From Squalus acanthias (Eukaryota), in contig CM059430.1 of assembly GCA_030390025.1 (NCBI GenBank), forward strand, positions 67,704,001 to 67,768,000: a stretch of 64,000 nt of DNA, in the 5' to 3' direction. How positions within the stretch are numbered: position 1 is the first letter of the stretch; each line of letters opens with the position of its first letter. Positions 419 to 61,919 of this stretch are shown here, piece after piece. The position numbers and the translations under genes were made by a program. The notes beneath the pieces are model-generated. The model had not been told where the DNA came from. It made no database searches and worked only from the letters and a program-made list of their open reading frames with translations.

Positions 419-1579
419 ATGGGGGCTGCAATGATTGGGGGCGTCGTCCTGCTCCAGCTGAATCGGAGGATAGTGAGACGCAGACAGAGAGTGGCAATGA
501 TGGCCAGACGGAGGAGGGCCATCAGGCGCATGTACAGGAGAGCTTACCCTCCCAGGGTATATCGTGAACAGCTCTCCTACATCCATATGTCCGAGGAGCT
601 GTGTTTGCGAAGGCTGCGATTCAGCAAGGAGGTGGTCACTGAGCTCTGCCACCTGCTGCAGCCAGATCTGCAGCCTCAGCTGAGGTCCAGGACGTCTCTG
701 TCGGTGGCAGTGAAGGTCACAGTGGCTTTGAACTTCTACGCCACTGGCTCATTCCAAGCTGCTGTTGGGGACCTCGCCAATATCACCCAGTTTGCGGTGC
801 ATCACTGCATCCGGCAGGTCACCAATGCCCTCTTCAGAAGGAGACGAGACTTCATCTCTTTCCCTATGATCCCAGACAAGCAGCATGACCGTGCTCTGGG
901 CTTTGCGAGGGTAGCGGGCTTCCCCATGGTGCAGGGCGCCATTGACTGCACGCATGTGGCTTTGCGTGCTCCGCGAGAGAATGCAGAGGAGTTCCGGAAC
1001 AGAAAGGGGTTCCATTCCTTGAATGTGCAGTTGGTCTGTGACCACAGACAGGTGATTCTCGCTGTCAATGCCCACTATCAGGGCAGCTGCCACGATGCTT
1101 TCATCCTGCGCCAGACTACTGTGGCAGAACTTTTCGAGGCACCGCATCAGCCAGTTGGTTGGCTTCTGGGGGACAAGGGGTACGCATTGAGCACCTGGCT
1201 GATGACACCGCTCCGTGCGCCAAACACCCCTGCTGAGCTGCGGTACCAGGAAAGCCATCAAGCAACCAGGAACATTATTGAGCGCACAATCGGCGTGCTG
1301 AAACAACGGTTCCGCTGTCTGGACCATTCCGGAGGAGCCCTGCAGTACTCGCCTGAGCAAGTTTCGAACTTCGTAGTCGTGTGCTGCATGTTGCACAACA
1401 TGGCAATCCTCAGGACCCAGCCAATGCCACCAGGCCTTGTAGTACCACCAGAGGAGGAGGAGGAAGAGGAGGAACAGGACGAGGACGATGATCATCAGCA
1501 GCACCAAGGCAGGAGGGCGGCCCACAATGGTCAAACTGCAAGGGCCGTCCGTCAACGACTAATAGCAAGCCGCTTCTAG
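419..1579 (+). CDS. Harbinger (HARBI1-like, DDE_Tnp_4) transposase, 386 aa
   Basis: Uninterrupted ORF with GAIDCTH, NRKGFHSLNVQ, GSCHDAFIL, LLGDKGY, IERTIGVLKQRF and CCMLHN motifs, plus an acidic C-terminal tail. Confidence 0.95.
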   Translation: MGAAMIGGVVLLQLNRRIVRRRQRVAMMARRRRAIRRMYRRAYPPRVYREQLSYIHMSEELCLRRLRFSKEVVTELCHLLQPDLQPQLRSRTSLSVAVKVTVALNFYATGSFQAAVGDLANITQFAVHHCIRQVTNALFRRRRDFISFPMIPDKQHDRALGFARVAGFPMVQGAIDCTHVALRAPRENAEEFRNRKGFHSLNVQLVCDHRQVILAVNAHYQGSCHDAFILRQTTVAELFEAPHQPVGWLLGDKGYALSTWLMTPLRAPNTPAELRYQESHQATRNIIERTIGVLKQRFRCLDHSGGALQYSPEQVSNFVVVCCMLHNMAILRTQPMPPGLVVPPEEEEEEEEQDEDDDHQQHQGRRAAHNGQTARAVRQRLIASRF

Positions 1580-10925: not shown

Positions 10926-11003
10926 ATTTAATCAACTTTGAAAAACTTCGCACTCAAACTTTTTGGACGAACTCGGAACTAAGGATCCAGGGAATCACCC
11001 ATC

Positions 11004-26008: not shown

Positions 26009-26062
26009 ATGTCGGCGACTTTGCTTTTCCTGTGCCTGAGTCTCCGGGGATTATTTACACAG
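26009..26062 (+). CDS. Copy A leader exon (phase 0, frameshifted relative to copy B)
   Basis: ATG...TTTACACAG|gt is homologous to the copy B leader; CTCC-GGGG versus CTCCTGGGG. Confidence 0.7.
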
Positions 26063-26231
26063 GTACCTCTTTATTCATTATCGCAGCTACTTTAATTTAT
26101 AAGATGATTCCGAGATAGTTTTCACACTAATTTAGTGAAATGTGCTCCCTCTATTTAGATTATTTTTCTCTCTTCCAACTCCATGACGTGTCTAATACAA
26201 TTAACCTGTACTTCACTATATTTTCTAACAG

Positions 26232-26552
26232 CAGCGGACCAGATTTCGTTCAGAGTGACTCAAGCGCCCAAACAAGCGACAGTATCCAGAGGAGGGAACA
26301 TCACCTTCTACTGCATATTCCCCATCTCCCAGGACAATTCCTGGGTAAGAGTGTATTGGTGGAAACAGGGTGAGAATGAATACCTGCGCACAGGCGCGGA
26401 TAACAGAAAACGATTTGGTCTGAAAAGTAAAGGGTGCGGGTTCTTTCAGGTGCGAAGCGCGACTTTCAAAGACTCTGGAGTCTATCAGTGCGCAGTGCTC
26501 CGTCAAGGAATAATTCGAGGAAATGGAACCGGATCACATCTAATTGTGCATA
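26232..26552 (+). CDS. Copy A Ig V domain exon with J-like motif
   Basis: VTQAP..ITFYC..VYWWKQ..DSGVYQC..GNGTGSHLIV; AG/GT boundaries, phase 1/1. Confidence 0.9.
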
Positions 26553-27604
26553 GTAAGTGTTATACACAGGAGAGCGGCACAGTCGAAAATATATCGAACA
26601 TAACAAACCGGGATGCTTTGTGATTGTTTTATTGCATCGCTTTTGGCAGTATAAACATGTCTATTGATACATTTCGCGATAAGTAAAGTTGTATGTTCGT
26701 GTGCTCTGTGCGAACTGCTAATTAGATATTCATTGTAACAGGCAGAGTATTGCAAAATTTGTCAATATTAACAAATTTGACTAAAACGCAACAATTTTTC
26801 CACCTGATGTCTAATAGCGGAAGTTCGGAACAAATTCCAAGCATATAACTGACTGAAAATCGTTTGTATTAATGCGTCTCTCCCAACATATACATCTTGG
26901 CCCACTTCTGATGCTCTGTCAGCCTCCATCGCTGTCTTTGCGGTTTAACATTCCTGAAATTAATTCTCACATAATGTTAGCGTCAGGGATTAGAAAGCCG
27001 GCGTGAAACTAACTGTTGATCAACGGCTTCACTCATCAAACTGGAGCTTGGAACACACAATGTTGTCACCTCACTAACCTCCAATAAATAAAACAATACA
27101 GAGGAACTGTGTTACCGAAACCTCCTGAGGTTCAACCGAGCATAATTTCATTCAGAAAATGTCATGCTTCGGCTGTGAGATCTGTCCGATATCTACCAAG
27201 CCCTCGTTTTATCATATACAGAATGCAGATTATACCTCACTGTCAATCTATGAGTGACAAACACGGAGGGTCTCGGCGCGCCAACTTACCCCCAGGGTTT
27301 AATTATTTAATACTTGGGACTATGAAACGCAAACATAGATTAGCAATCGTTGCGATGTCTGAGTAACTGCTGAGTAACTCAAAGTCTTGGACTTGATTGC
27401 GCAAGTAAATTTGAACAAATGCCGGAGTCTACGAGAGGTATGGATAGGGTGTGTGTAGATGGCATGCATAGCATTAACATGACAAGAGGCTGTGATTTGT
27501 AATGGTGGTATGATAATATAATGGACCGAAGGCAAATCAGAATCATATTTAATTTCTCGCAATGGTGCCCAGTAAACCAACTTTGTTTATTCTCTGCTCC
27601 GCAG

Positions 27605-27916
27605 CGGCCCCAGCCCCACTGAAGATTGTCTCCAGGACAACTGAAGGGAATTCACCTGCGTCTCTGACACTTGTGTGTGAAACGGCTGCGTTTTTTCCGG
27701 AGAATTTCACCCTCACTTGGTATAAAAATGGCGTCGAAACTGCATCAGGAATACATACCAGGAAAGTGCAGAAGACGGAGGGACTGTATGAAGTTTGCAG
27801 CTCTTTGACTGAGACGCAGCCTGTCCCGAGCAACACCAATTATACCTGTTTGGTTTCTCATGTCTCTCTCGAGACTCCAGCTGCTGTCACCTATGTTGTT
27901 TCTAAATCTAACCAAG
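27605..27916 (+). CDS. Copy A Ig C1-set domain exon
   Basis: LTLVC...FFPENFTLTWYKNG...LYEV.SSL...YTCLVSHVSL; AG/GT boundaries, phase 1/1. Confidence 0.9.
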
Positions 27917-28072
27917 GTACGAGGCCTACAGTCCAAAAAACAGCTTCTACTCAATTCGTAAAGAGATATATCGTAGAGGTTGTACATGCTAACAATCATG
28001 AAGTTAGTCCACAGAAATACCGTGGGAGATATCAACGAAAGCATTAAATACATGTTTTAATGTATCATTACA

Positions 28073-31000
28073 TAGGATTACATAGGATATACGGCACAGA
28101 AACAGGCCATTCGGCACAAACAGTCCATGCCGGCGTTTATGTTCCACTCGAGCCTCCTCCCGTCTTTCCTCAACTAACACTGTCAGCATAACCCTCTATT
28201 CCCTACTCCCTCATATGTGTATCTAGCCTCCACTTAAATGCATCTATACTATTTGCCTTAACTACTCCCTGTGGTAGCGAATTCCACGTTCTCCCCACAA
28301 GGAAACATTCTCTCTGTATCTACTCTATCAAAACCTTTCATAATTTTAAAGACCTCAATTAGTTCACCCCTCAGCCTACTTTTTTCAGGTGAAAAGAGAC
28401 CCAGCCGGTTCATCCTTTCCTGATAGGCATACCCTCGCATTTCTGGTATCATCCTTGTAAATCTTCTCTGCACCCTCTCCAGTGTCTCTATATCCTTTGT
28501 ATAATATGGTGACCAGAATTGTACGCAGTACTCCAAGTGTGGTCTAACCAAGGTTCGATACAGGTTTAGCATAACTTCCCTACTTTTCAATTCTATACGT
28601 CTAGAAATAAACCCTAGTGCCTGCTTTATTTGTTATGTTCGTGTTAACCTGTGTCGCTACTTTAAGTGATTTGTGTATTTGTACTCCGAGATCCCTTTGT
28701 TCCTCTACCCCACCCAGACTCGCACGCTCTAAGTAATAAGTGACCTACCTATTCTTCCTACCAAAATGTAACACCTCACATTTCTCTGTGCTGAATTTAA
28801 TTTGCCAATTATATGTCCCTTCTGCAAGATTATTGGGGTCTTCCTCTAATTTGTTGCCGTCCTCCTAAGTATTAACTATCAACCCAATTTGGTGTCATCC
28901 GTAAATTTAGAAATTGTGTTTTTGATTCCAAAGTCTAAATCGTTAATATAAATTGTGAACAACAGTGGTCCCAAAACTGATCCTTGTGGAACACCACTAC
29001 CAACCTTCTGCCACTGTGAATAGCTACCCTTTACCCCTACACTCTGCTTTCTGTCTTGAAGCCAGTTCGCTGTCCATTCTGCTACTTGTCACCTGACTCC
29101 GCATTCTCTGACCTTATTCATTAGTCTATTATGTGGTACCTTATAGAAGGTCTTTTGAAAATCTAGATAAATTAATTCTATTGTATTACCCTGGTCTATT
29201 CTCTCTATTAACTATTCAAAAAATTCAACGAATTTGTTCAAACAAGACTTTCCCTTTTGAAATCCATGCTGACTATTCATTATTATATTTTTGGCTTCTA
29301 GATGTTCCTCTATTTTCGCCTTTAGTAGCGATTCCATTATTTTTCCTACCATCGATGTTAAGCTGACTGATCTATAGTTCCCTGGACATGTTCTATCTAC
29401 CTTCATAAATATAGGTATCATGTTGGCTATCTGCCAGTCCTCTGGCACTACACCTTTTTTTAATGCATTATTAAATATGTGTAGTAATGCCTCTGCTATC
29501 TCTTCCCTGGATTCTTTTAAAATGCACGGATGTAATCCATCTGGACCAGGGTTATTTTCCTCTTTGAGATTCATCAGTTTATTTAATATATCTCCTCCTG
29601 TTATTTTAAATGCAGCTATTTAATTACTAATCTCATGATCCAATGTCATGGTGCTGGGAGAATGTTTCCCTTGGCTGGGGAGTCTAGAACCAGGGGCCAC
29701 AGCCTCAAAATAAAGTGTAGGCCATTCAGGACTGAGATGAGAAGAAATGTCTTCCAACAGATGGTGGTGAATCTTTGGAATTCACTACCCCAGAGGGCTG
29801 TGGAGGCTCAGTCATTGTGTATATTCAAAACAGAAGTCGATAGATTTCTGACTAGTAAGGGCATCAAGGGATATGGCGATAGGGCCGGTGAATGGAGTTG
29901 AGGCAGAAGATCAGCCATGATCTCATTGAATGGCGGAGCAAGCTCGAAGGGCCGAATGGCCTACTCCTGCTCCTATTTCTTATGTTCTTATGTTCTTATA
30001 TCCACCTGTTCTATCTCCCTGGAAAATATAGATAAAAAGTAATTATTTAATATTTCTGCCATCTCTCTATCACTGCCTGTGGTATTTCCCTTTCCATCCC
30101 TTAGTGGCCCTATTCCCATCTCGACCTTCCTTTTTATTGATGTGCCTGTAAAATATGTTATTATTTTGTTTTATGTTCCTTGAAAATTTAATGTCATAGT
30201 TCCTCTTTGTTTTTCCTTTTTTTCACTTCTCTCCTAACCTCCTTGTATGTTCCCTTATCATGCTCTCCTCTGCTGTCCATGTACTTAATGTATGCCTCTT
30301 TCCTTACGCTCAATTTTCCATTATATCTTTATTCATCCATGGTGTCTCAGTAGTGTTTAGCTTGTTCTTGTTTTTTTAGCAGAATATATTTTTCCTGGAC
30401 TCTGTTGAACACAGTTTTAAATGATTCCCATTGTTGTTTTATGTCATTGTTTGCCAATATCTTTGGCCATTTTATTTTCCCAATTTCTATTCTCAGCCCC
30501 TCAACCTCAGCTTTTCTCTACCCTATTACCATGGACTTTGTTATACTTATGTCCTTCTCAATTATTATTTTAAAGAGTATTATATCATGGTCAATATTGC
30601 CCAAATGTTCCCCTACTTTTACTTCTCTTATCTGCTCTGGTTCATTCCCCATTACTAGATCCAATAGCGAATCCTCCCTTCTTGGGCTTTTTAAATATTG
30701 GGTTAGAAAGGAGTTCTGTACACATTGTAGGAACTCCATTCCCTTATCCCCTTTACCGACCTCTTCTGTCCAATTAATATCTGGGTAGTTAAAATACCCC
30801 ATGATTATTATTCTAAGTGTTTTAATAATTTTCCTAATTTGTTTGCATATTTCATCCTCCACATCCCTTCCACTATTAGGTGGCCTGTTGACTACCCCGA
30901 TTAGTGTGATTTACCCTTCATTATCTTTTATCTCTATCCACATGCATTCTATTTCTGTCATGCTTGTAGCTGCGTCAATTTTTTCTACTGCCATTATGTT

Positions 31001-31690
31001 ATCCCAAATAAGTACAGATACTCCACCTCCCCTTTTTCCCTCTCTATCTTTTCTAAATATGTTATGCCCTGCAATCTTTTCTGTCTCAGTAATCCCTACT
31101 ATGCCTGGCTCCTCACAATGTATGATTGCCTCCAGCTCCCCTGTTTTATTACGGTCACTGTGTGCTGTCCAGACATTTTTAATAGCATTTACTTTCACTT
31201 CATTTTTAACCATCTTTTCACACACCTGTTCTATAACTCTATTTATTCCCTGGCCATCAATGTACTCCCTTACTTTATTCTTTCCTATGCTCTCATTTCC
31301 TGATTTGTTTATATTTTGGCTGGTTTCATTTCTTGTGTATCCCTCCCCCCATCTTACTAATTTAAAGCCTATGCCACGTCGCTATGCACCCTTTCTGCTA
31401 GGACACGGGTCCCATCCCGGATCAGGTGGCGCCCGTCCCATTGGTACAGCTACTTCCTGTCCCAGTACTGGTGCCAGTGTCCCATGAAAAGGAACCCTCT
31501 TTCCCACACCATCCCTTTAGCCACGTGTTAATTCCTCTAATCTGAATGCTTCTATGCCAATTTGCACGTGGCTCGAGTAATAATCCAACGGTTGTTACCC
31601 TCGATGTCCTGCATTTCAATTTAGCTCCTGACTTCAGCAGTACCTCCTACCTGTTGCTACCTATGTCGTTTGTTCCACGTGGACCAGAAC
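28073..31690 (-). mobile_element. Decayed CR1 LINE (ORF1 end, EN, RT, 3' end)
   Basis: Fragments INTWLKGWC, GGGVSVLI, FNYPDINW, LLDLVMGN, PGPDGLHP, YRSVSLTS and YCVQFWSP. Confidence 0.88.
29650..30000 (+). mobile_element. CR1 3' fragment nested in an antisense CR1
   Basis: MFPLAGESRTRGHSL..VVNLWNSLPQ; TTCTTATG tail repeats. Confidence 0.85.
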
Positions 31691-31794
31691 AACCCGATGT
31701 GTTGTAAAATGGGTTATATCGCCCGCCACACATATATTCTCAGTCAAACTTTATTTGATTGCAAATTACTCTATTTGATGTATGATAAATATAA

Positions 31795-32420
31795 GAACAT
31801 ATTAACATAAGAAGTAGGAGCAGCAGTAGTCCATACGGCCCATCGAATCTGCTCCACCATTCAATACTTCAATACCTTCTACCTCAACACCACTTTCCCA
31901 TCCTATCCCCATATCCCTTGATTCCCTTAGTGCCCAAAAATCTATCGATCTCTGTCTTGAATATTTTCATCGACTGAGCATCCATTGCCCACTGGGGTAG
32001 AGAATTTCGAAGATTCACAAAAATCTGAATGAATAAATTTCTCCTCATCTCAGTCCTATATGGCCGACCCCTTATCCTGAGATTATGACGACTAGTTCTA
32101 GATTCTCAAACCGAGGGAAACATCCTCTCAGCATCTACCCTGTCAAGCCCTCTAAGAATTTTATACATTTCAACGATATCACCTTTCATTTTTCTAAACT
32201 CCAGAGAATATAGGCCCATTCTATTCAATCGCTCCTCATAGGACAGCCCTCTCATTCCAGGAATCAAACTAATGAACCTTCGTTGCACTCCCTCTAAGGC
32301 AAGTATATACTTCCTTAGGTAAGGAGGTCAAAACGGTAAACAGTACACCGGGTGCTGTCTCACCAAATCGCAATATAATTGCAGCAAGACTTTCTTACTC
32401 TTATACACCAACCCCTTGGA
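31795..32420 (-). mobile_element. CR1 3' fragment
   Basis: LSYEERLNRMGLYSLEFRKMKGD and a CR1 3' UTR. Confidence 0.85.
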
Positions 32421-33241
32421 AACATAAGCAGCAATGTATATTTTGTCCGATTATATTTCCTCACCTTATGAATAATAATTTCCAGTTTCGTCTGTTTCCA
32501 TGTTAATAATGTTTTGTTCTTTACCATTGTCTGTTCTCCTTGCAAGACTGTTACCAAGAGCTACAGTCATGTTGTTTGCTCTGAGATTTCTCCCAATGCA
32601 GTTCCCGATCCTGACCCCACTTTCGGATACTTCAGCTAAATACCACCAAGATGTTTATCTTTGTTGCTCCATTATATTTCACATTCTGCCCGTTAATAAT
32701 CATTTTTTCTTTCTTTCCATGTTAAAATGGTTTTATTAGCTTACGTTATCTAGATTTCCTGCATCAAGTCTGTTATCAGGAGCTGCATTGAAGATGCCTG
32801 CGCCCCGGCTTCTCCCAATGCAGTTCCCGATCATGATCTCCCTTCCGGCGAACCCTCGTAAAGAGTTCTGAAATTAACCCACTGGCCAACACTTACCCCT
32901 TACCCCTCCATGGCATTGTGGGTTGGACCTGTTTCATACATTTCACTTAAGCTGTGCTAACAGCCTGGCTGCAGTACAGCCGCTTACATGGTTTTAATAA
33001 CAACTGTTTGCCTCACCAGACAATAATTCATAAACCACCCCGCGTTGATCTCCTTTACTATTTAGGGACAGACACAGATCACCACAGTAGCACCAACATT
33101 CATGCGATAATGGAGATTATATGGTTGGCTGACTCTAGTCGTGTATTGTAGCTCAGGTTGTTTGTGTGTTATTCTGATGAGCAGCAGCAAAGAAACTGGC
33201 AAACCGACCCATAAACATTCCTTCCATACACGGATTTACCG

Positions 33242-33316
33242 AACAAACAAGTGACTTACGCGACGCTAGAATTGTCAGGCTCCAAAAAATCGAGGAAACC
33301 CAAAAATAACAAATGA
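33242..33316 (+). pseudogene. Copy A relic of the last cytoplasmic exon (ITIM VTYATL)
   Basis: NKQVTYATLELSGSKKSRKPKNNK* is homologous to copy B GTYATLELSGPEKAGKSKNNK; flanking intron and UTR are also homologous. Confidence 0.8.
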
Positions 33317-50015: not shown

Positions 50016-51762
50016 TTAGCAGTTGTCACCGGTGAAGGCAGTACTTCAGCAGTTAGCAGAGGAGAATATAACCCAGGGTTTATCTTTGCATTCCAGATAC
50101 AAGATAGTAAGTAGTTCATCGTAAACAAGGTTAAATCATTCTGTGGAATATTTCAGCAGTTTCAGTTGCTGGACTTTATTTATCCTACAAATAAAATAAC
50201 GAGGACGGGAATTCAAGTTACATTAAAACAAATTAAAAGGGACAATTTTCCTCTTCTTGTATTGGGCAAGAGCATTGGGACTTCCCATCTAGTGCTTCCC
50301 GACCATTTGACCAAAGCTTACCCTACTCCACCCCAAAATATACTGCGAAATACTACCACACCAATCATGTACTTCACACCTTGGTCCATTTCCCAGTGTG
50401 TCCTGATCCTGTGACTGGCCCGAATGCTGACATGATTCAATGGGAGAACAAAGTAATAAATCTAACAGCGTTGCGCATGTCATGTTACCGTCAACTATTA
50501 TAAAATTATACCTCCACGTGATTATTGGAAATTGACAAAATAAACTTGTCACATGTCGGCACACCTTGTCACCAGTGAAGGCCATGATTAGCAGGACGGT
50601 GTAATTAGAGCTTGACAAGTTTACCTCGGCAGTGCAGTTTGCAGTATAAATGTGGGTACAGGAATTTCTGTTGGGAAAACAGAAAACTTACGACGGAATG
50701 TATGACTTTAAAAGGTGACTGATTCCCACTTCTTTGTCCAAGATTTAGGTCGCACGTGGTAGTGTTTCTTTCTTTGTTTCAACGTCCATTTTATTCCGAA
50801 TTTGCCGAGACTCTTGGGACGTTTTCTTCTATATTAAAGGCGCTATAAACTACAGATTGTTCTTGTTGTTCGATCCTATGGGGGGTTTTGGTTTTGATTG
50901 GCGGCATTCACTACTCTCCATACTTGGCCAAATCCCTCAGATAAACTGATGAGTGAGTGATTACTTATATCAATCGGGAGGGTATAGGTAATAATTTGTG
51001 ACGTAACGCACAAAGCCTTACCTACATTTTAAAGTATGGCGTCCGTAGACACGTGCAATATTAGGGCACTTTAGAATACCCTTCAAATCACAGTGAAACC
51101 TTCCATGCACTCGAATGAGAAGATTACCGCTCACTTTTCTTCACATATTTTTGCCGATTAAGCTCTTGATCTGGAAGCTCATTAGATGCACTTTTTTATC
51201 TAGCTAAGATATCCGCTATCAAACCAATTTGCACAGTTTAATCATGGTTTCCACTATTTGGCTCCAATTGGGAGAAATTTATTGCATTAGCGCCTCGCGT
51301 TAGCGCCTCCGGGGGGCACGAATGGGGCGCAACCGGTGGCGGCGATAGTACGGACGCCCGCCAAATTCAGGTGGAGGTTTGCGGCGGCAGTAGCCAATAG
51401 CGCCACAATCTCCTGCGCTCTGAGATCATGATGTCAACTGGGTGTGCAGCACCCCGGTAGCACCCCGGTAGTGCCCCAGCTCTGAAATTCACTCTCGCCC
51501 CCTGCCTGAGCACCTGACGGTAGCAAGGACAGGTAGTGGAGTCGGTATGCAGTCGGATGAGCGCTGGAGGAGCCTATATAAAGGCGTCAACCTCAGTTTT
51601 TTTTTTAGTCGGCAAAGAATGCTGCCTTGTAAGTATGACATAGGCAAACAGGCGTTTTGAGCGAATTCAGCGTTTTCCACTTGAAGGAGTCTTCTGCCTC
51701 GGGAGAATACTTTATCAATTCCATTTCGGTGAGATTTAAAAGTGCAACATTTCCCTAATTTA

Positions 51763-52900
51763 ATGGAGGCTGTTCTGCCACTGGACCTCGATCTCCAGCG
51801 TCAATGTAGGAGGCAGCGGAGGCAGAGAGAAAGATTGCAAAATGTGGCCAGAGGGAGGAGGGCCAACAGGGCTCTAAACAGGAGGACTTACCCTCCCAGG
51901 GTGCTCTGGCAGCATTTCTCCTACATCAATATAACTGAGGAGCAGTGCCTTAGAATGCTCCGCTTCACCAAGGGCCTGGTCACGGATCTCTGTCACCTCC
52001 TGCCGCCTGACCTTGAGCCTCAATTCAGGACCACCACGGCTTTCTCAGTGGCAGTCAAGGTGACCATCGCCCTCAATTTCTACACCAGCAGATCATTCCA
52101 GTGTGCAACAGGAGACATATCTAACATAGCACAGTTTGCCATCCATTGCTGCATCTGCGAGTTCACAGACGCTCTCTACAGAAGGAGAAGGGATTACATT
52201 TCCTTTCCCAGGACCAGAGAGAAGCAGCATGAGCATTCATGTGGCTTTTCCAGGATAGCGGGCTTCCCCATGGTGTAGGGCACAATTGACTGAACCCACG
52301 TTGCTTTGTGGGCACCTCATAACAATCCTGAGTTATTCTGTAACCGTAAAGGCTACCACTCACACAATGTGCAGTTCGTGTGTGACCACACACAGCGCAT
52401 ACTCACCATCAATGCCCTCTATCCTGGCAACAGCCACGATGCCTTCATCCCATGCCTGCTCTGTTCCAGACACCACATCAAGTTTACGGATGGCTGCTGG
52501 GAAACAAGGGCTATCCGCTCTCCACCTGGCGCATGACTCCCCACCGCAACCCCAAAACTCGTGCTCATTACTCACACAGTGAGCCAGGCTGCCACCAGGA
52601 ACATAATTGAGCAGACCATGGGAGTGCTCAAGCAATGGTTCTGCTGCCTTCCCCGCTCAGGAGGAGCCCTCCAATACTCGGCTGAATTGTTGTCACTTTT
52701 CGTCGTCGTCTGCTGCATGCTGCACAACTTGGCCATCCTAAGGGCGCAGCCATTACCACCAGGCATAGCCGCAGCACCTCAGGAAGAGGAAGAGGGAGAC
52801 GAGGAGGAGCAGGACGAGAAGGACGAGGAGGTACAGGAGCACGAACAGCAGCGATGTAGGAGCCAGCCAATTCATCAGCCTTGTGGAAGGGCGATCCGTG
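51763..52900 (+). pseudogene. Harbinger transposase pseudogene
   Basis: Homologous to 419-1579; TAG at 52276 and frameshifts; NRKGYHS.NVQ and CCMLHN retained. Confidence 0.9.
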
Positions 52901-56076: not shown

Positions 56077-56137
56077 ATGTTGTCGACTGTAATGTTTCCT
56101 TCCCTTTTCCTGTCTCTCCTGGGGATCATTTACACAG
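56077..56137 (+). CDS. IgSF VJ-C1 receptor copy B (SIRP-like), exon 1, signal peptide
   Basis: MLSTVMFPSLFLSLLGIIYT-G|gtaact; hydrophobic leader, phase 1. Confidence 0.85.
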
Positions 56138-56326
56138 GTAACTGTTTATTCTCTATCCCAACCGTCGCGATAAAAAATCTGAAGCAGATACCACACAAAA
56201 TGAATGGGTAAAGTTAGTCCGTCTGTATTCTTCTTTCTCATTTTCATTTCCTTGTAGAAATGCATTTTAAAGTGTTTTATTCCGCATAGAATACAATTAA
56301 CCAAACTTTGAATATATTTTCAACAG

Positions 56327-56647
56327 CTGCTGCGCGTACTTCGATCAGCGTGTCTCAAACTCCCGAACAAGTAATTAAATTAAGGGGGACAGACATAACC
56401 TTCCATTGCGTAATCCCCCTTTCTCATGACAATTCAGGGGTAGAAGTGCGCTGGTGGAAACATGATGAGAATGAATATCTGCAAACAGGAGCCGATAACA
56501 GAAAACGATTTGTTCTGAAAAAAAAAGGAGGCGGTTTCTTTGAGTTACTGAACGTGACTTTCCAGGACTCTGGAATCTATCACTGCGCAGTGATCCGTCA
56601 GGGAAGAATTATTGGAAATGGAACAGGATCACATCTAACTGTGTGCG
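56327..56647 (+). CDS. Copy B exon 2, Ig V domain with J-like motif
   Basis: VSQTP..ITFHC..WWKH..DSGIYHC..GNGTGSHLTV; AG/GT boundaries, phase 1/1. Confidence 0.92.
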
Positions 56648-56873
56648 GTAAGTGACCGGAATGAGCGGGAACGTCCAATTGTATCAAATGTAGCGAGATT
56701 GATGTTTTGTCATTGTTTAATTGCACCGTCTTTGATATTATAAAACAATTATATTAAGACATTTACACTGAAACTCTGCTCACAACTGCTAATTATACGG
56801 CACAATATGACGTATCATTTGCTTAGTTGTGTAAAATGCCATCAAAATAAACAGAATAATTAACATGTTACTC

Positions 56874-57001
56874 AGTCAAAATACTGCGGATGTTGGAAAT
56901 CTGAAACATAAACAGAAAATGTTGGAAATACTCAGCAGTTCAGGCAGCAGCTGTGGAGAAAGGAGCAGAGTCAACGCTTCAGGTCGATGACCTGTCGCAA
57001 G
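56874..57001. mobile_element. Penelope-derived short repeat in copy B intron 2
   Basis: Same family as 42790-42978; 13-bp TSD TAACATGTTACTC; absent from the copy A intron. Confidence 0.75.
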
Positions 57002-57597
57002 TAACATGTTACTCGATTCATCTCAATATTTATTTTTACATCGGACTTCTGATGATGGAAGTTGGGGACCAAATTCCAAATATATTGATAACTGACTGAA
57101 AATCTTTTCTGTTAATGCCCCACTCCCGTCATATACACGTTACTTGCTCCATTTTAGATATTCTGTTTGTCCCTGTCGCTGTAAATCAGGTTTAACAGTC
57201 TCTCTTATGAAATTAATGCTCACATACTGACAGGCTGATTCGGGTGGCGGACTTCAGATCAGTTTAATTTAACTGCTGATCAATGGATTCACTCAACAAA
57301 GCGGACCACGAACAGTAATTTTGCAGCTCTTTCGCCTCCAATAAATAAAACATTCACCAGCGACTGTTGTTGCAGCCTTTTGAGGTTGAATGGAAAATAA
57401 TTTCGCTCAGCCGTTCTCATGCTCCGGCTGTGTGAGCTGTCCGATATCCTCTTCGGCCCTGCTTTATTATCGGTAATGGACAGATTATTAATTTCTCTCT
57501 TGGGGAGACAGACAGACAGACCTAGGGTTACTAACAAACTTATCTTATGTTTACTATCTCCCCAGTAACCTGATTTTCCCCATGGTCTGTTCCGCAG

Positions 57598-57909
57598 CTG
57601 CCCCAACTCCAGTGAAGATTGTCTCCAGGACACCCGAGAGCAATTCAGCTGCGTCTCTGACTCTTGTGTGTGAAACGGCTGAGTTTTACCCGGGCGAATT
57701 AACCCTCGTTTGGTATAAAAATGGCGTCGAAACCGCAACTGGGATAAATTCCACTAAACGGCAGAACACTGAGGGACTGTATGAAGTTTCCAGCTCTTTG
57801 GAAGAGACGCAGCCTGTGCCGAATGGGGCTGTTTACATCTGTTTGGTATCTCATGTCTCCCTCGGTACTCCCGCCATTGCCATCCACACAGTTGCTAATT
57901 CCGACCCAG
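57598..57909 (+). CDS. Copy B exon 3, Ig C1-set domain
   Basis: LTLVC..FYPGELTLVWYKNG..LYEVSSSL..YICLVSHVSL; phase 1/1. Confidence 0.92.
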
Positions 57910-59066
57910 GTACGAGGCCAAAAGGCCTAGAACTGAGGTCAACTACTGTTATATTCTGAAAGGCTATTTCATAGAGTTTTTTTATATTGATAACCATGAA
58001 GATAGAAACAAGCTCCCAGGAAATATCAAAGCAAAGAGAAAATCAATGTTTTAATGTAAAAAATTATTGACCCGAACCTGTTGTAAAACCGAGAGTCATA
58101 TTATCGCCCTCCATCCAGAAACTGCGTTTTAAAACTCCGTAGCTTCCAAATTGTAAAAAAAAATGAGCAGGTGGTGTAGCTCTTCCATCCAATTATTTTA
58201 CATCTCTTGCTTATTATTAAACATTCAAATTTGTACTCTTGTGAGATTGATTTTATTCTTTCCCATTATCTGGTTTCCTTCCATGAGTTTCACAACTAGA
58301 AGCGGCAGTTCTTTTTTCTGGCCTCGCATGTCTCCCAGTGCGGCTCATGATTCCGGCCGCTGTTGGGCAATTCACTCTGAATTGGTCAGGAATTAGCATG
58401 TGGTCTGGCCGTAACACAACCGCTCCGTGATAAAGAGGTTTGGAGCGGGAACCCGTTTCATACATTTCATTCAGACTGTGAACCAGATGTGTTTGCACTG
58501 CAATTGGTTGCAAGATGTCGGTTTATTCACACCTATTTCTCTGTAATTAACAAACAACCGTGTGCGAGTTTCCTTTCTTATTCAGTGAAAGTTTTACTTC
58601 AGTAAAAACACTGCAGAGAATTGAATTTGCATTTAAACCCAATTGATACAATCCGCCTTTTCCTTCGGCAATAGCGAGTCACGTGTCACTGAATTGCCGC
58701 GATTTCACAAACAATAGTTTAAGTGCAAAAGAAAAGTCAAGTACAAGAACAAGCCTTTCTGTCCATCGAAAATTATTCAGCTGGAATTCTAACTCTCCTA
58801 AACTCTAACACTCAGAGCATCCTAAACTAATAGCCTCCCTCGCAGATTATTCCGGCCGTGTATCACCCTTTTGTGAGAAGTTTCTTTTGATATCAAATCT
58901 AAAAAGATAAAGTATGGTTATTTTCAAAATGAACATCTTCTCTTGCTATACTGCGTAGTTGCTGTAAATATGAGCAGCAGTTTAGCCAACAAATTATCCC
59001 GATGTCTCTTTTCAGGTAACGGCAGCCACAAATTAGAAATCAGTATCTATCATTTTACTCTTCCAG

Positions 59067-59177
59067 AATCTGATGGTAAATATCGTTATATCTGGGGTCT
59101 TGGATGTCGGTTGGGTGGATTGGCGTTTCTGGTGCTCATGATCATCATTGGGACGAGATGCAGTTTGAAGAATAAAG
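59067..59177 (+). CDS. Copy B exon 4, transmembrane segment
   Basis: cttccAG acceptor; ESDGKYRYIWGLGCRLGGLAFLVLMIIIGTRCSLKNK; G|gtaggt, phase 1/1. Confidence 0.82.
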
Positions 59178-59844
59178 GTAGGTATTGCGTTAATCGTTTG
59201 ATTTAATACAAATTTTTAGAGGGATAGAGAGAGCGTCATGGGCGGCACAGCAGGAGAGCAGCGCAATTATTACTTAAAGGTTCAGGTTATGATATCTGAT
59301 GCCACATGAACAGAAATCGCGTGTTGCAAATTGCACTGAATTCAGCATCTTATAATGAAAGAATTATCACAGAATGAGACTCTAAAGGATCTGATCATCT
59401 TGATTTTAACAACGAAAATTTCCACTTTGTGGCAGATGATAAGTGCAATTTGATCGATTGTTTCATCACTTTGGGGGCCTGTGACTAGTTTGGGTAAAGT
59501 GGGGTCAGTGTCCAGTTGCGAGTCGATGTACACGACTGTAGATGGCTACATTGATTCGGATTTTCAAAACAGCCCGGAAAATGTAATACCACAAAATAAC
59601 TGCTGATGAGGAAGGTCATTTGGTCCATCCCGACAGATGGACTGTTTCCCCAGTGTTGAATCCAGATGTTTGCTAAGGGATCTCAGGTCGTTTGCCTCAT
59701 TTTCTGTATGTGGAACTTTGTTCCTCATGTTGATCTCTCTGTAAAGAAGAATTTCCTGACATCATGTCTAAAATTCTCATTTGCTAGTTTTTTTTTTACC
59801 AGAGTCCCCGAGTTCAGGCCTCGCAGTTAAATATCTGATACTAA

Positions 59845-60257
59845 ACGGGTACGATAGTGTAGTGCTTATGTTACTGAACTGGTAATCCAAAGGTCTGGTT
59901 TTGTAATCCCGAGAAGGTGGGTAAACCCATCCAAGGCATTTTGAGAATTTAGATGCAGTTTAAAAAATTTGTAAATAAAAAGCTGGTATCAGTAAAATAC
60001 AAGTGACTATGAGGCTGTCGGGTTGTCATAAAATGCTAAGTAATTCATTAATGTCCTTTAGAAACGGAAACTTGCCATTTTTAACCGATCAGGCCTATAT
60101 GTCACATCAGTTCCATACCAATATGGTTAACACTTAACTGCCCTCTGAAGTGATCTTGCAAACCGTTCGGTTGTCTGTAATTAAGGGCAACTAAAGATGG
60201 GCAATAAATGCTGCCCTTGTCAGCGACACCAACGTCCTGAGAATCAATGAAATAAAA
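59845..60257 (+). mobile_element. SINE (tRNA-like head, LINE-related 3' tail)
   Basis: A-box-like TAGTGTAGTG head; tail GGGCAATAAATGCTG..CAGCGAC matches the 3' end of the LINE at 7685-7760. Confidence 0.7.
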
Positions 60258-60760
60258 CTGTGGATTAACATTTTCTATACGCTTAGCTATCTTATATGTT
60301 TCCATAAGATCATAGCTGAGACGCCTCCTTTCCAGTCTAAAAGATCACGTTTATTCAGAGTTTCCTCATAGCTCAGTCCACTGACCCTGGGAAACCAGCC
60401 TGGTGGCTCTTCTCTGCACTGGCACTAGCGCTTGACCATTAGTGATCTAAATTGGTCACACTATTCATTGGTCCGTGTGACAAGAGCACTTTACAGTTTG
60501 ATCGTTCCCTCCTCTGATTTTCATTCTATTGCTTTGCCTATGTTGTTCATCAGCCTATTGGCTTTGTCCATTGCTGCTATGCATTGGATGGACAAGTTTA
60601 GCGTCCAGTCTACTAAACCCCTAGGTCTCTTTCAGTTCCATCTTTAGCTATTTTAATACAATCCATGAACTACATGTGTAGTTTATTTTTTTCTTCCTAG
60701 CGGTAGCGCTCTACTCTTCACTGCGTTGAATTTCATCTGCCATTGCTCTGTCAACCTATA
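60258..60760 (-). mobile_element. Old CR1 fragment
   Basis: METYKI..R.E.V; antisense LSYEE.L and W.M.FN motifs. Confidence 0.6.
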
Positions 60761-60875
60761 TATCTAAAGTCATGTTAAGCTTTTCATTGACTGCAAAATA
60801 CTTTTGAAAGTGCAAACATTGAAACTGAATAAACATTTTAATCATTGAATGTAATTAAATTCCATTCATTTGCAG

Positions 60876-60919
60876 GTAAACAGGAAAGTATAACAATACT
60901 AGACCCTCATGAAGAGCTG
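60876..60919 (+). CDS. Copy B exon 5, short cytoplasmic exon
   Basis: tttgcAG..CTG|gtaggt; GKQESITILDPHEEL; phase 1/0 links exons 4 and 6 in frame. Confidence 0.7.
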
Positions 60920-61436
60920 GTAGGTTCATATTATTAATCCAGGAAAAGTGTTCCAGTATAAATAAATATTCTTATGATGGGGATATTTCCTCAAAATCTA
61001 TTTCACAAAAGTATTTGTCCCTCTTTGATGGGTCATTCAAATCGTGTTTTCACACTTGTTGCGATGCAGATGTAAGTGATTAACGAAAGAGAAAAATGAA
61101 ATCCGTAGCTTCATTCAACATATAACTAGGTATTGGTTATGTGTACATCCACCTAAACGTTGCTTCTGGAATCTGATATGATGCTGAAACTACCTCTTGT
61201 TTAAACATATCTGTAATACTGTATTGTACTGAAAATCGACAGGTTGAAATGTAAGTTACAATGGGCACACTATTTACCGGCCTTAATATTCGCAAATCTT
61301 TAAATATATTAGCTGTGGTTTCTGCATTTTATTTGTAGCCCAGGTCATTCTGTTTATTGTTTGGTCAGCAGTCTGTAAATTTTTGAAGGCAATGAACAAG
61401 CCACATAACAAAACATTTTCTTTCTGGCTCATGCAG

Positions 61437-61532
61437 GGAGCCAATGACGAGATCGTGGCTTATGCTGCAGTCGACTTGAGCAAAGCCAGGAAAACTCCAA
61501 GATTTAAACGTGAAGAGGAGAGCTCAGCGTAA
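61437..61532 (+). CDS. Copy B exon 6, ITIM (VAYAAV), ending in premature TAA; exon donor at 61538
   Basis: atgcAG acceptor; GANDEIVAYAAVDLSKARKTPRFKREEESSA*TQ|gt. Confidence 0.75.
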   Translation, partial: GANDEIVAYAAVDLSKARKTPRFKREEESSA

Positions 61533-61745
61533 ACTCAGGTGGGGCTGAAAAGCAGATAAGAGAAACACAGATCACCCGTGGAGCACCAAAATTATTGTAA
61601 TAGCGGAGTATTTGGGGCTGTTCTGACTTTCACCGTGTGTTGTATCTAAAGCGTTTTGTGTGTTATTCTGCCGGCTGCCTTGAGCAGCAAACCACAAACT
61701 GGTAAAACGATCAATCAACAATATTTCCAAACATTGGCTTTTCAG

Positions 61746-61919
61746 ATAAAACAAGGGACAGCCCGGGACAAGGGGACGTACGCGACTCTAGAATTGTCTG
61801 GACCCGAGAAAGCGGGAAAATCTAAAAATAATAAAATAAGCGCAGAATATGCCGAGATACAGACGAAAACTCCAAGAAGAGTAACAAAGGCCGTCTACAC
61901 AGATGCAAGAACGAAATAG
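61746..61919 (+). CDS. Copy B exon 7, tyrosine motifs GTYATL / AEYAEI / AVYTDA (coding only if the upstream TAA is absent)
   Basis: ttttcAG acceptor, phase 0; open to TAG at 61917-61919; AATAAA at 62005 and 62216. Confidence 0.72.
   Translation: MKQGTARDKGTYATLELSGPEKAGKSKNNKISAEYAEIQTKTPRRVTKAVYTDARTK

What the first reader, a model, noticed from the sequence alone, without database searches (positions are those of the whole stretch)
56077..61919. Non-rearranging VJ-C1 immune receptor with a SIRP-alpha-like signalling tail
Seen: seven phase-compatible exons give leader, V, C1, TM and cytoplasmic tail (374 aa if the internal TAA is read as a codon). The V exon already contains a J-like G strand (GNGTGSHLTV) with no RSS or intron, and is followed by one C1-set domain. 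Established: C1 domains occur mainly in Ig/TCR/MHC, tapasin, SIRP and some B7-family proteins; germline VJ-C1 is the architecture proposed for the pre-RAG antigen-receptor ancestor; mammalian SIRP-alpha is V-C1-C1. Inference: a diversified SIRP/NKp30-related receptor family with a one-chain TCR/IgL-like ectodomain in a probable cartilaginous fish, possibly uncharacterised.
Basis: partly seen in the sequence, partly recalled or inferred. Interest (0 to 1): 0.82.

Follow-up and report, generated by a model that had tools for sequence, protein, structure and literature searches.

The report
Shark VJ-C1 receptor gene, truncated tail
This is a real seven-exon shark gene for a surface receptor built like one chain of a T-cell receptor but needing no gene rearrangement; it belongs to a large, unnamed family in sharks, rays and chimaeras, and this copy has a premature stop in its signalling tail.

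Summary
On the + strand at 56077-61919 there are seven exons. All six introns are GT-AG and all phases are compatible. They encode a leader, a germline-joined V(J) domain (Pfam V-set, 8e-11), one C1-set domain (2.5e-13), a transmembrane segment and a tyrosine-motif tail. No RSS and no second C1 exon were found.

The gene belongs to a multigene family seen in 17 cartilaginous-fish species. NCBI gives its members inconsistent automatic names: SIRP-alpha-like, SIRP-beta-like, tapasin-related, CD276, NCR3LG1-like, Ig-lambda-like. Neither the V nor the C1 domain is specifically SIRP-like or NKp30-like. Only the tail resembles SIRP-alpha, in its motifs and their spacing.

The family has two forms. 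One has an uncharged TM and a long ITIM tail. The other has a basic TM residue and a short tail.

In this copy TAA replaces a tyrosine that is present in all four relatives inspected. The predicted product is therefore 314 aa with one ITIM. It also has an unusual TM arginine.

Its upstream tandem neighbour is a pseudogene. No transcript of this exact gene was seen; only spliced contigs of 92-96% relatives were found.

Ten literature searches found no description of the family, but key papers were not held. First readers noted similar genes elsewhere in this genome; those notes are unchecked.

The parts
56077..56137 (+). Exon 1: start codon and most of the leader (20 codons + 1 nt, phase 1)
   Evidence: Translation; donor GT. 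A contig of run X1 (92.5% alike) ends at 56137 and continues into exon 2.
56327..56647 (+). Exon 2: end of the leader plus a V domain whose J-like G strand lies in the same exon (germline VJ); 321 nt, phase 1-1
   Evidence: Pfam V-set 8.2e-11. No RSS. AF2 pLDDT 89.2. A contig of X3 ends at 56647.
57598..57909 (+). Exon 3: a single C1-set domain, 312 nt, phase 1-1
   Evidence: Pfam C1-set 2.5e-13. AF2 pLDDT 88.1. Structural matches are IgNAR C, Ig CL, TCR C-beta, MHC II beta2 and SIRP-gamma d3, Z 13.4-14.2. A contig of X2 covers 57599-57909 with unlike letters on both sides.
59067..59177 (+). Exon 4: short stalk, transmembrane segment and the start of the tail; 111 nt, phase 1-1
   Evidence: 83% identical over 35 aa to Heterodontus francisci P0198.
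59108..59110 (+). CGG arginine codon in the outer third of the TM segment, at a position where the family consensus has alanine
   Evidence: Consensus GCAxGGL in alignment A2. No family model listed has a basic residue at this exact position.
60876..60919 (+). Exon 5: 44-nt cytoplasmic exon, phase 1-0
   Evidence: 71% identical over 14 aa to P0198.
61437..61538 (+). Exon 6: 102-nt phase 0-0 cassette holding the first ITIM (VAYAAV) and the in-frame stop
   Evidence: 75% identical over 28 aa to Heptranchias P0178. The equivalent cassette is skipped in RefSeq isoform P0175.
61530..61532 (+). TAA at the place of the conserved tyrosine of the second tail motif
   Evidence: Relatives P0198, P0178, P0161 and P0011 have Tyr here, 4 of 4 inspected. 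Family consensus TxYAQxKQ.
61746..61919 (+). Exon 7: last exon, still an open frame, with a SIRP-alpha-like tyrosine pair (TYATLEL, then EYAEIQT 23 residues on), a further tyrosine and TAG. It lies downstream of the TAA, so it is translated only if exon 6 is skipped or the TAA is not real.
   Evidence: 61-64% identical over 56-57 aa to P0198, P0161 and P0178. SIRP-alpha peptide as printed in PMC5589908.
62005..62010 (+). First AATAAA after the TAG; candidate polyadenylation signal
   Evidence: sequence only; no reads cover it.

Best explanation
Shown: this is a structurally intact gene of a multigene family found across cartilaginous fish. Members are type I membrane receptors. Their ectodomain is one non-rearranging VJ domain followed by one C1-set domain, the layout of a single TCR or Ig light chain.

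Shown: the family has two forms.
- One has an uncharged TM and a long tail of ITIM/ITSM-like tyrosine motifs.
- The other has a basic residue at the outer end of the TM and a short tail without motifs.

Inferred: these are inhibitory and activating partners, as in SIRP, KIR and other paired receptors.

Shown: this gene descends from the long-tail type. It sits in a subfamily shared with Heterodontus, Scyliorhinus and Chiloscyllium (V and C1 trees) and Pristis (C1 tree).

Shown: in this assembly a TAA replaces the conserved tyrosine of the second tail motif. The predicted product is therefore a 314-aa precursor with V, C1, a TM carrying an unusual arginine, and a tail of about 55 residues that keeps one ITIM.

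Inferred mechanism: the V domain binds an unknown ligand through its CDR-like loops. A Src-family kinase phosphorylates the ITIM tyrosine, which recruits SHP-1 or SHP-2 and dampens activation. With one ITIM this would be a weakened inhibitor. Skipping the phase 0-0 exon 6 would bypass the stop and restore the paired-tyrosine module of exon 7. The alternative is that the gene is a young pseudogene, like its tandem neighbour.
For: Gene structure.

Family size and range:
- The V exon finds 201 proteins at E <= 1e-3 and 84 at E <= 1e-10 among 1.84 billion representatives. The best is 81% identical.
- Of 30 hits looked up by name, 25 are chondrichthyan, 4 are reptilian multi-V proteins and 1 is unnamed.
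- A profile of 20 members finds 59 proteins. 58 are chondrichthyan at E <= 2e-54, then there is a gap to 1.6e-5. Raising the limit to E 10 adds one weak hit.

Two forms: among 74 distinct family models with a TM, the counts are basic TM with short motif-less tail 17, basic TM with other tail 2, no basic residue with short tail 8, and no basic residue with long tail 47. Fisher p = 6e-9. The rows are related, so they are not independent.

Subfamily placement:
- In the V tree (118 rows) the gene falls in a 5-row clade with SH-aLRT 98.
- In the C1 tree (97 rows) it falls in a 6-row clade with SH-aLRT 97.

Stop at a conserved tyrosine.

Exon-6-type cassette skipping and C1-exon skipping in RefSeq isoforms.

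Transcription: spliced contigs of 92-96% relatives use the same exon ends.

The SHP-binding reading of paired tyrosines rests on the SIRP-alpha literature: PMC5589908 passage and PMC2785349 introduction.
Against: - No contig at 99% or more lies on any exon, and none at 90% or more lies on exons 4-7. The three runs are small and only guessed to be RNA. Expression of this copy is therefore unshown.
- The TAA could not be checked against reads.
- The tandem neighbour is clearly dead, so this copy may be decaying too.
- In exon 7 the residues at -2 of the two tyrosines are G and A, where relatives mostly have L and T. This fits relaxed constraint.
- Ligand, cell type, phosphatase binding and adaptor pairing are all inferred.
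- The TM/tail classes come from a crude script on gene models. Some models are partial, and two rows (P0072, P0203) are evident mis-picks.
Confidence: 0.7

Rival explanations
1. It is the cartilaginous-fish orthologue (co-orthologue) of the SIRP family, in a form with one C1 domain. It would work like SIRP-alpha, with the basic-TM members working like SIRP-beta.
For: - NCBI's pipeline names many members 'tyrosine-protein phosphatase non-receptor type substrate 1-like' or 'SIRP beta-1-like'.
- V-then-C1 topology, paired inhibitory and activating forms in a gene cluster, and a tail with SIRP-alpha-like motif pairs at nearly the same spacing (PMC3716694 passage).
- One skate model has two C1 domains (P0047).
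- SIRP C1 domains are among the C1 matches: 2wng 7.8e-11 and SIRP-gamma d3 Z 13.4.
Against: - The same pipeline gives other members five other names, so there is no stable best hit.
- The V domain is no closer to SIRP V (20% identity, Foldseek rank 35) than to many other V domains.
- The C1 domain is closer to MHC II beta2 (28-32%) than to SIRP C1 (21%).
- The two C1 domains of P0047 are near-identical repeats. That points to a recent exon duplication, not SIRP d2 and d3.
- Paired ITIM/ITSM tails occur in many unrelated receptors (recalled), so the tail may be convergent.
- Synteny was not tested.
Confidence: 0.15
2. It is a member of the shark NCR3 (NKp30) gene family already described by Kinlein et al. 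2021. In that case it is already known.
For: - NKp30 is a non-rearranging VJ receptor with a TM arginine (recalled).
- Some family models lack the C1 exon and so have NKp30's layout (P0006, P0040, P0049, P0061).
- NKp30 is a structural match of the V model: Z 13.0, rmsd 2.6, 101 aligned, 23% identity.
Against: - NKp30 is tied with dozens of other V domains and is absent from the best 60 sequence matches.
- None of the 30 names looked up, and none of the 59 named hits, is an NCR3 receptor name.
[quoted passage not shown] The white-shark member lies on a 193.5-Mb record, while that species' MHC is on chromosome 19 (PMC10751288, Fig. 2 legend). That these differ is my inference.
- An unchecked scan note places NKp30-like single-V genes on another piece of this genome.
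- The Kinlein text itself could not be read.
Confidence: 0.1
3. It is a shark orthologue of the PRARP genes. [quoted passage not shown]
For: Same general design as I recall it: VJ, a C-type domain, TM and ITIM. PMC10751288 lists PRARP with NKp30 as VJ genes in the MHC.
Against: - No PRARP sequence or text was available (the PRARP search found only the citation).
- The profile search found no bony-vertebrate relative above E 1e-5.
- The genes here are tandem on one strand. As I recall it, PRARP genes form an oppositely oriented pair.
Confidence: 0.08
4. This copy is a non-functional pseudogene. The stop is the first lesion of a gene that is being lost by birth-and-death turnover.
For: - A nonsense codon sits at a conserved tyrosine.
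- The -2 positions of the exon 7 motifs are degenerate.
- The tandem neighbour is dead.
- No contig of this exact copy was found.
- The window is otherwise filled with transposon ORFs.
Against: - All 12 splice sites, the start codon and every exon frame are intact.
- Exon 7 is still open over 57 codons with its motifs, so any loss is recent.
- The truncated product keeps the ectodomain, the TM and one ITIM.
- Several RefSeq models of the family also end shortly after the TM exon.
Confidence: 0.3
5. The gene is caught in conversion from an inhibitory to an activating (or hybrid) receptor. It has gained a TM arginine for adaptor pairing and has lost most of its inhibitory tail.
For: - Both changes occur together here.
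- In the family, a basic TM residue goes with a short tail in 17 of 19 models.
- Scyliorhinus canicula models carry an Arg one or two residues away in the same inhibitory-type TM and end right after the TM exon: P0163 in this subfamily and P0005 in the neighbour's subfamily.
- Recurrent origin of activating from inhibitory receptors is established for KIR and Ly49 (recalled).
Against: - One ITIM remains.
- The arginine is at a position where no other listed model has one.
- No adaptor is known.
- Two coincident lesions in a decaying gene would explain the data equally well.
Confidence: 0.2
6. The TAA is an assembly or sequencing error, or a rare allele. The normal gene would then encode the full 374-aa receptor with all tail motifs.
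For: A single third-base change separates TAA from a tyrosine codon. Everything downstream is intact.
Against: Nothing in the data suggests an error. The window has no N. No reads cover the site, so this stays untested.
Confidence: 0.12

Closest known systems
SIRP family (SIRP-alpha, -beta, -gamma)
   Same: - N-terminal V domain with a J-like strand, followed by C1-set domains.
- A clustered family with inhibitory (ITIM tail) and activating (basic TM, short tail) members.
- Tail motif pairs of the same type and spacing (PMC2785349 abstract and section 16; PMC3716694 passage).
   Different: - One C1 domain, not two.
- V and C1 are no closer to SIRP than to other V and C1 domains.
- The ligand is unknown.
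- The basic TM residue is an Arg at the outer end. SIRP-beta's is a Lys for DAP12 (the Lys is recalled).
- Orthology and synteny were not tested.
NKp30 / NCR3 and the shark NCR3 family (Kinlein 2021; text not seen)
   Same: A non-rearranging VJ exon. C1-less isoforms or genes of the family have NKp30's V-stalk-TM layout. This copy has a TM arginine.
   Different: - A C1 domain is present.
- The tail is long and carries ITIMs.
- There is no specific V similarity.
- The family is probably not MHC-linked (inference).
UrIg and UrIg2 (shark non-rearranging VJ genes)
   Same: A single-exon VJ with a split leader, followed by C1-type domains, in cartilaginous fish (PMC12227049). UrIg2 is among the C1 matches: 9dmx at 8.5e-13 summed over three domains and Z 12.9.
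   Different: - UrIg has three C1 domains and is secreted by the liver.
- UrIg2 has nine to eleven C domains.
- The paper describes each as a single paralogue (UrIg, UrIg2), not a multigene family.
- Neither is described there with an ITIM tail; 'ITIM' occurs 0 times in that paper.
- Here there is one C1, a TM, ITIMs and a large family.
PRARP (chicken and other non-mammalian non-rearranging VJ receptors; recalled, text not held)
   Same: The VJ - C domain - TM - ITIM design, and its proposed link to the antigen-receptor precursor.
   Different: Could not be compared. No bony-vertebrate relative was detected by the profile search. The arrangement here is a tandem array, not an opposed pair.
TCR and Ig light chains
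   Same: V(J)-C1 ectodomain. The V model matches VNAR, TCR V and antibody V domains. The C1 model matches Ig CL, IgNAR C and TCR C-beta.
   Different: - No RSS and no separate J segment.
- The receptor has its own tyrosine-motif tail.
- There is no evidence of a partner chain.
MHC class II beta chain (beta2 domain)
   Same: Highest sequence identity of the C1 exon to any solved domain, 28-32% with TM-score about 0.8. The best single-stretch phmmer score is 43.8 bits.
   Different: There is no peptide-binding domain. The similarity is that of one C1-set domain.

Membership tests
Non-rearranging VJ-C1 IgSF receptors (general kind) | V domain with the J-like G strand encoded in the same exon, with no RSS | tested here: met
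   Translation; V-set 8.2e-11; no RSS-like site.
Non-rearranging VJ-C1 IgSF receptors (general kind) | A C1-set domain directly after the V domain | tested here: met
   C1-set 2.5e-13, 50.6 bits against cut-off 21. Structural matches are all C1-set, Z 12-14.
Chondrichthyan VJ-C1 paired-receptor family (unnamed; RefSeq 'PTPNS1-like' and other names) | V and C1 exons group inside the family with support | tested here: met
   V tree: 5-row clade, SH-aLRT 98, inside a 48-row clade at 99. C1 tree: 6-row clade at 97. 81% and 73.5% identity to H. francisci P0001.
Chondrichthyan VJ-C1 paired-receptor family (unnamed; RefSeq 'PTPNS1-like' and other names) | TM exon and tail cassettes homologous to those of family members | tested here: met
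   TM 83%, exon 5 71%, exon 6 65-75% and exon 7 61-64% identity to P0198, P0178 or P0161.
SIRP | Ectodomain of V plus two C1-set domains | tested here: not met
   One C1 exon only. The SIRP definition is from the PMC2785349 abstract.
SIRP | V and C1 domains closer to SIRP than to other IgSF families | tested here: not met
   SIRP is not in the best 60 V matches. SIRP-alpha V is rank 35 at 20% identity. SIRP C1 is 21% against 28-32% for MHC II beta2. No tree with SIRP sequences could be built.
SIRP | Cytoplasmic tail with paired tyrosine motifs that bind SHP-1/2 | tested here: inconclusive
   Motif type and spacing match: 23 against 24 residues. In this copy the motifs lie after the stop. Binding was not tested, and convergence is not excluded.
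SIRP | Binding of CD47; synteny with the tetrapod SIRP cluster | not testable with these tools
No annotated shark genome was on hand.
NKp30 / NCR3 | Single VJ domain, stalk, TM arginine, short tail, no C domain | tested here: not met
   A C1 exon is present and the tail has ITIMs. A TM Arg is present. The definition is recalled.
NKp30 / NCR3 | MHC linkage | tested here: inconclusive
   The white-shark member is on a 193.5-Mb record, and that species' MHC is on chromosome 19 (PMC10751288). That these are different chromosomes is inferred, not checked.
UrIg / UrIg2 | VJ followed by three (UrIg) or nine or more (UrIg2) C1-type domains | tested here: not met
   One C1 exon. The definitions are from PMC12227049.
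Rearranging antigen receptors (TCR, Ig) | Separate V and J segments flanked by RSS | tested here: not met
   V and J are in one exon and there is no RSS.
PRARP | Orthology to chicken PRARP-A/B; opposed gene pair | not testable with these tools
   The paper and its sequences are not held. The genes in the window are tandem on one strand.
ITIM-bearing inhibitory receptors (functional class) | At least one (S/I/V/L)xYxx(I/V/L) motif in the translated tail | tested here: met
   VAYAAV in exon 6, upstream of the stop. The consensus is recalled. Phosphorylation and SHP binding were not tested.

The most novel reading that the evidence does not exclude
The family is an undescribed lineage found only in cartilaginous fish so far. 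Its members are membrane-bound, single-chain VJ-C1 receptors with their own inhibitory and activating signalling. That is the layout postulated for the antigen receptor before the RAG transposon split a VJ exon, or equally the primordial one-C1 form of the SIRP lineage. It appears to lie outside the MHC. If so, it gives a living, expressible model of a pre-rearrangement receptor. Its ligands, cell types and possible C1-mediated pairing could be tested directly.
Probability: 0.15. Interest if true: 0.85.

Novelty: new variant of a known kind. Interest (0 to 1): 0.55.

Why it matters
C1-set domains are almost confined to antigen receptors, MHC molecules and a few associates. SIRP has been argued to be related to the precursor of antigen receptors (PMC2785349). 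Shark non-rearranging VJ genes (UrIg, UrIg2, NCR3) are now central to that debate (PMC12227049, PMC10751288).

The family found here is large and spans chimaeras, sharks and rays. It has the minimal VJ-C1-TM design and built-in paired signalling. That would add a membrane-receptor candidate to a discussion so far built on secreted or many-domain molecules. It would also push a SIRP-like signalling module back to the oldest jawed vertebrates.

For this particular copy the interest is smaller. It shows birth-and-death turnover: a dead neighbour, a fresh stop on a signalling tyrosine, and a new TM arginine. It may be a snapshot of how inhibitory receptors turn into activating ones.

Tried and rejected
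Rejected readings and checks
- A rearranging V gene: no RSS.
- A second C1 exon or further family exons in the window. Only the two genes were found. Other tblastn hits (9-20 kb, 38 kb) come from transposon-derived parts of mispredicted models.
- The alternative acceptor at 59016. It is in frame but relatives do not support it; they go straight from the C1 end to the stalk.
- A TM exon for the upstream paralogue. The only hydrophobic stretch found lies in repeat sequence.

Searches that did not discriminate
- The PDB profile search with V alignment A1 was swamped by multi-Ig proteins.
- The ESM Atlas gave only generic V-set clusters.
- Pfam found nothing in the TM or tail exons.
- The search for homologous proteins with P0010 found 11 proteins, all chondrichthyan by name.
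- Repeating the profile search at E 10 added one weak hit.
- The search of earlier findings by sequence and by one word set returned nothing.

Reads and transcripts
- The look-up of sequencing runs listed no run that holds the stretch. It gave three runs of the same species label with next to none of the words.
- Laid on the gene, these gave only contigs of relatives and repeats.

Literature
- All ten searches found no paper on a shark SIRP-like or VJ-C1 ITIM family.
- Not held: Kinlein 2021, Flajnik 2012, the UrIg 2023 paper and Fu 2019. For Kinlein and Fu I saw only reference-list entries. What I say of NKp30 and PRARP design is recalled.
- Supplementary files were not asked for. The supplementary gene tables of PMC10751288 and PMC12227049 may list these genes or their linkage.

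Not done
Every search and fold was exon by exon, and the product lengths are sums of exon lengths.

Full report
WHAT IS THERE

The + strand between 56077 and 61919 holds seven exons:
- exon 1: 56077-56137
- exon 2: 56327-56647
- exon 3: 57598-57909
- exon 4: 59067-59177
- exon 5: 60876-60919
- exon 6: 61437-61538
- exon 7: 61746-61919

I fixed these limits by locating them in the sequence and translating each exon by itself. All six introns begin with GT and end with AG after a pyrimidine tract. The phases (1,1,1,1,0,0) fit. All searches, folds and trees were done exon by exon.

Exon 2 is a V-set domain (8.2e-11) and exon 3 a C1-set domain (2.5e-13). Both fold with confidence, pLDDT 89.2 and 88.1. 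The G strand with its J-like glycine motif is part of the V exon, and nothing like an RSS follows it. There is one C1 exon only. Exon 4 encodes a short stalk and a TM segment. Exons 5-7 encode a cytoplasmic tail. Exon 6 contains an in-frame TAA at 61530-61532.

THE FAMILY

Searching the V exon against 1.84 billion representative proteins gave 201 hits at E <= 1e-3 and 84 at E <= 1e-10. The best is 81% identical.

I looked up 30 of the hits by name:
- 25 come from cartilaginous fish
- 4 are reptile proteins with several V domains
- 1 has no name

A profile of 20 full-length members found 59 proteins. Of these, 58 are chondrichthyan at E <= 2e-54, and then nothing until 1.6e-5. Raising the limit to E 10 added one hit. 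That tool scores only the 8000 candidates that share the most words. The gap therefore shows a compact family. It does not prove that distant bony-fish or tetrapod relatives are absent.

Named members come from 17 species:
- a chimaera: Callorhinchus
- nine sharks: Heterodontus, Heptranchias, two Scyliorhinus, Mustelus, two Chiloscyllium, Cetorhinus and Carcharodon
- seven batoids: Amblyraja, two Mobula, Hemitrygon, Hypanus, Pristis and Narcine

In H. francisci, 19 protein clusters lie on one 99.65-Mb record. Isoforms were not separated in that count.

NCBI's automatic names are inconsistent. They include SIRP-alpha-like (PTPNS1-like), SIRP-beta-1-like, tapasin-related, CD276 homologue, NCR3LG1-like, Ig lambda-like, MHC class II beta-like and 'uncharacterized'. 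I read this as the absence of any stable named orthologue.

Most models are VJ, one C1, TM and tail. Some lack the C1 exon, and at least one of these is an isoform of a gene that has it (P0061 against P0174). One skate model has two nearly identical C1 domains (P0047).

TWO SIGNALLING FORMS

A script over the family models found 74 distinct models with a TM segment. It sorted them as follows:

| TM | Short tail, no motif | Other tail |
|---|---|---|
| basic residue at the outer end | 17 | 2 |
| no basic residue | 8 | 47 |

The Fisher test gives p = 6e-9 (raw lists). Three cautions apply. The rows are related proteins and some are isoforms or partial models. The classifier is crude, and two rows are evident mis-picks. 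The p-value is therefore descriptive only.

The pattern is that of paired inhibitory and activating receptors. Many basic-TM members share a distinct TM type with an Arg near the outer end and a 'VDH' end. The adaptor they would use is unknown.

THIS COPY

In trees of the V exon (118 rows) and the C1 exon (97 rows), the gene falls in a small supported clade (SH-aLRT 98 and 97). Both trees place Heterodontus, Scyliorhinus and Chiloscyllium members there. The C1 tree adds a Pristis member. These were 'quick' trees on about 105 columns, and many deeper forks are unresolved. Rows covering fewer than 90 residues (V) or 85 residues (C1) of the domain, and identical duplicates, were left out.

The TM and tail exons are 61-83% identical to H. 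francisci and Heptranchias proteins.

Where this gene has TAA, the four relatives I inspected (P0198, P0178, P0161, P0011) all have tyrosine. The motif around it (TxYAQxKQ) is the family consensus. The stop thus removes a conserved signalling tyrosine and everything after it.

What remains is 314 codons by exon arithmetic, with one ITIM (VAYAAV). Exon 7 is still an open frame. It holds a tyrosine pair 23 residues apart whose sequence resembles the SIRP-alpha peptide printed in PMC5589908, where the spacing is 24. However, the residues at -2 of its two tyrosines differ from most relatives.

Exon 6 is a phase 0-0 cassette. A RefSeq isoform of another family gene skips exactly this cassette (P0175 against P0174). 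Skipping it here would bypass the stop. This is an inference.

The TM has an arginine (CGG, 59108-59110) where the consensus has alanine. No listed model has a basic residue at that position. Scyliorhinus models P0163 (this subfamily) and P0005 (the neighbour's subfamily) have an Arg one or two residues away together with a tail that ends just after the TM exon.

EXPRESSION

No public run was found to hold the stretch. The three runs offered have the same species label, are kept as contigs, and are only guessed to be RNA. They gave contigs 92-96% alike that stop exactly at the ends of exons 1, 2 and 3. One of them joins exon 1 to exon 2. Close relatives are therefore transcribed and spliced as predicted.

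No contig matches this copy at 99% on an exon. Nothing at 90% or more lies on exons 4-7. Whether this copy is expressed is open.

WHAT IT IS NOT

SIRP or NKp30. By sequence, the V exon's best solved relatives are multi-Ig adhesion proteins (summed scores), shark VNAR and TCR beta. SIRP and NKp30 are not in the best 60, with either the single sequence or a 14-row V profile. By structure, VNAR, NCAM d1, CD79b, antibody and TCR V domains, NKp30 (Z 13.0, 23% identity) and SIRP-alpha V (20% identity) are all tied.

The C1 exon. It matches Ig lambda C, UrIg2, SIRP-alpha and MHC II beta by sequence. The best single-domain score and the highest identity (28-32%) go to MHC class II beta2. By structure all C1-set domains are tied.

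Membership. The gene fails the definition of SIRP (two C1 domains), of NKp30 (no C domain, short tail), of UrIg and UrIg2 (three, or nine or more, C domains) and of rearranging receptors.

PRARP could not be tested. It resembles the gene here in design, as far as I recall.

MHC linkage. [quoted passage not shown] The white-shark member of this family lies on a 193.5-Mb record, while that species' MHC is on chromosome 19 (PMC10751288). This suggests that the family is not MHC-linked, but it does not prove it.

HOW IT MOST LIKELY WORKS

Shown: the architecture, family membership, the two TM/tail classes, and the stop at a conserved tyrosine.

Inferred: the V domain binds a ligand. The tail tyrosines are phosphorylated and bind SHP-1 or SHP-2, so long-tail members inhibit. 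Basic-TM members pair with an ITAM adaptor and activate.

For this copy there are three readings:
- a weakened inhibitor with one ITIM
- a step toward an activating form
- a young pseudogene

I put 0.7 on the family and architecture reading as a whole. Within it, I put about 0.3 on 'already non-functional'.

NOVELTY

VJ-C1 receptors and paired ITIM/activating families are known kinds, and gene models of this family are public. I could not find any description of the family in ten literature searches. Four key papers from the field were not held, and supplements were not seen, so prior description cannot be excluded.

First readers of this scan noted similar VJ-C1-TM-ITIM genes 10.6 kb beyond this window and on other pieces of this genome. 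These notes are unchecked and count as leads only.

I rate the finding a new variant of a known kind, with interest 0.55. The family is worth a specialist's look. This single copy is an ordinary member with a fresh lesion.

Noticed in passing
window 26009-33316 (+): leader 26009-26062, V exon 26232-26552, C1 exon 27605-27916, last-exon remnant about 33245-33316: This is a tandem paralogue about 30 kb upstream, from a different and also widely shared subfamily (V 62% and C1 68% identical to the studied gene). It is a pseudogene:
- The leader exon is 54 nt and ends in phase 0, while the V exon needs phase 1. It has a 1-nt gap relative to the studied gene, and no other ATG fits.
- No TM or middle tail exons were found.
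- The last exon lacks its acceptor and stops early.
- The intron at 28.1-32.4 kb is full of repeats.
   Followed up: yes
window 10983-14957 (+): An open 1325-aa frame has aspartyl protease, reverse transcriptase, RNase H and integrase domains (Pfam). It looks like an LTR-retrotransposon pol-type ORF. It is only described here.
   Followed up: partly
window 347-1576 (+) and 51733-52275 (+): The first is a 410-aa frame with a DDE_Tnp_4 transposase domain (4.4e-38). The second is a shorter, similar-looking frame with no Pfam match. Many other reverse-transcriptase-like frames fill 4-50 kb.
   Followed up: partly
window 56877-56938 and about 59800-60400 (introns 2 and 4 of the gene): These short stretches are covered by hundreds of contigs at 90-95% identity with summed depths in the thousands to tens of thousands in all three runs. 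They are interspersed repeats, probably SINE-like, not part of the gene's message.
   Followed up: no
window 59016-59066: A second AG acceptor lies 51 nt upstream of exon 4. Using it would keep the frame open and add 17 residues to the stalk. Relatives show no such insert.
   Followed up: partly
family proteins P0018, P0024, P0065, P0103, P0160, P0207: These share a distinct TM type: an Arg near the outer end, a 'VDH' or similar end, and tails of 5-37 residues. It recurs in chimaera, sharks and rays and looks like a dedicated activating-type TM exon.
   Followed up: partly
proteins P0003, P0020, P0028, P0034, P0059: The nearest V domains outside cartilaginous fish belong to turtle and snake proteins. 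These have 3-6 tandem VJ-like domains, each ending in a similar GNG-type J motif, and ITIM-type tails. They are auto-named PIGR-like, NCAM2 or otk. In the V tree they form a separate long-branched clade.
   Followed up: no
window 56644-56646 (last full codon of the V exon): A cysteine sits right at the V-C1 junction. It is shared by some relatives (P0001, P0004, P0009, P0010, P0023) but not by the neighbour's subfamily. It could form an inter-chain disulphide; this was not tested.
   Followed up: no
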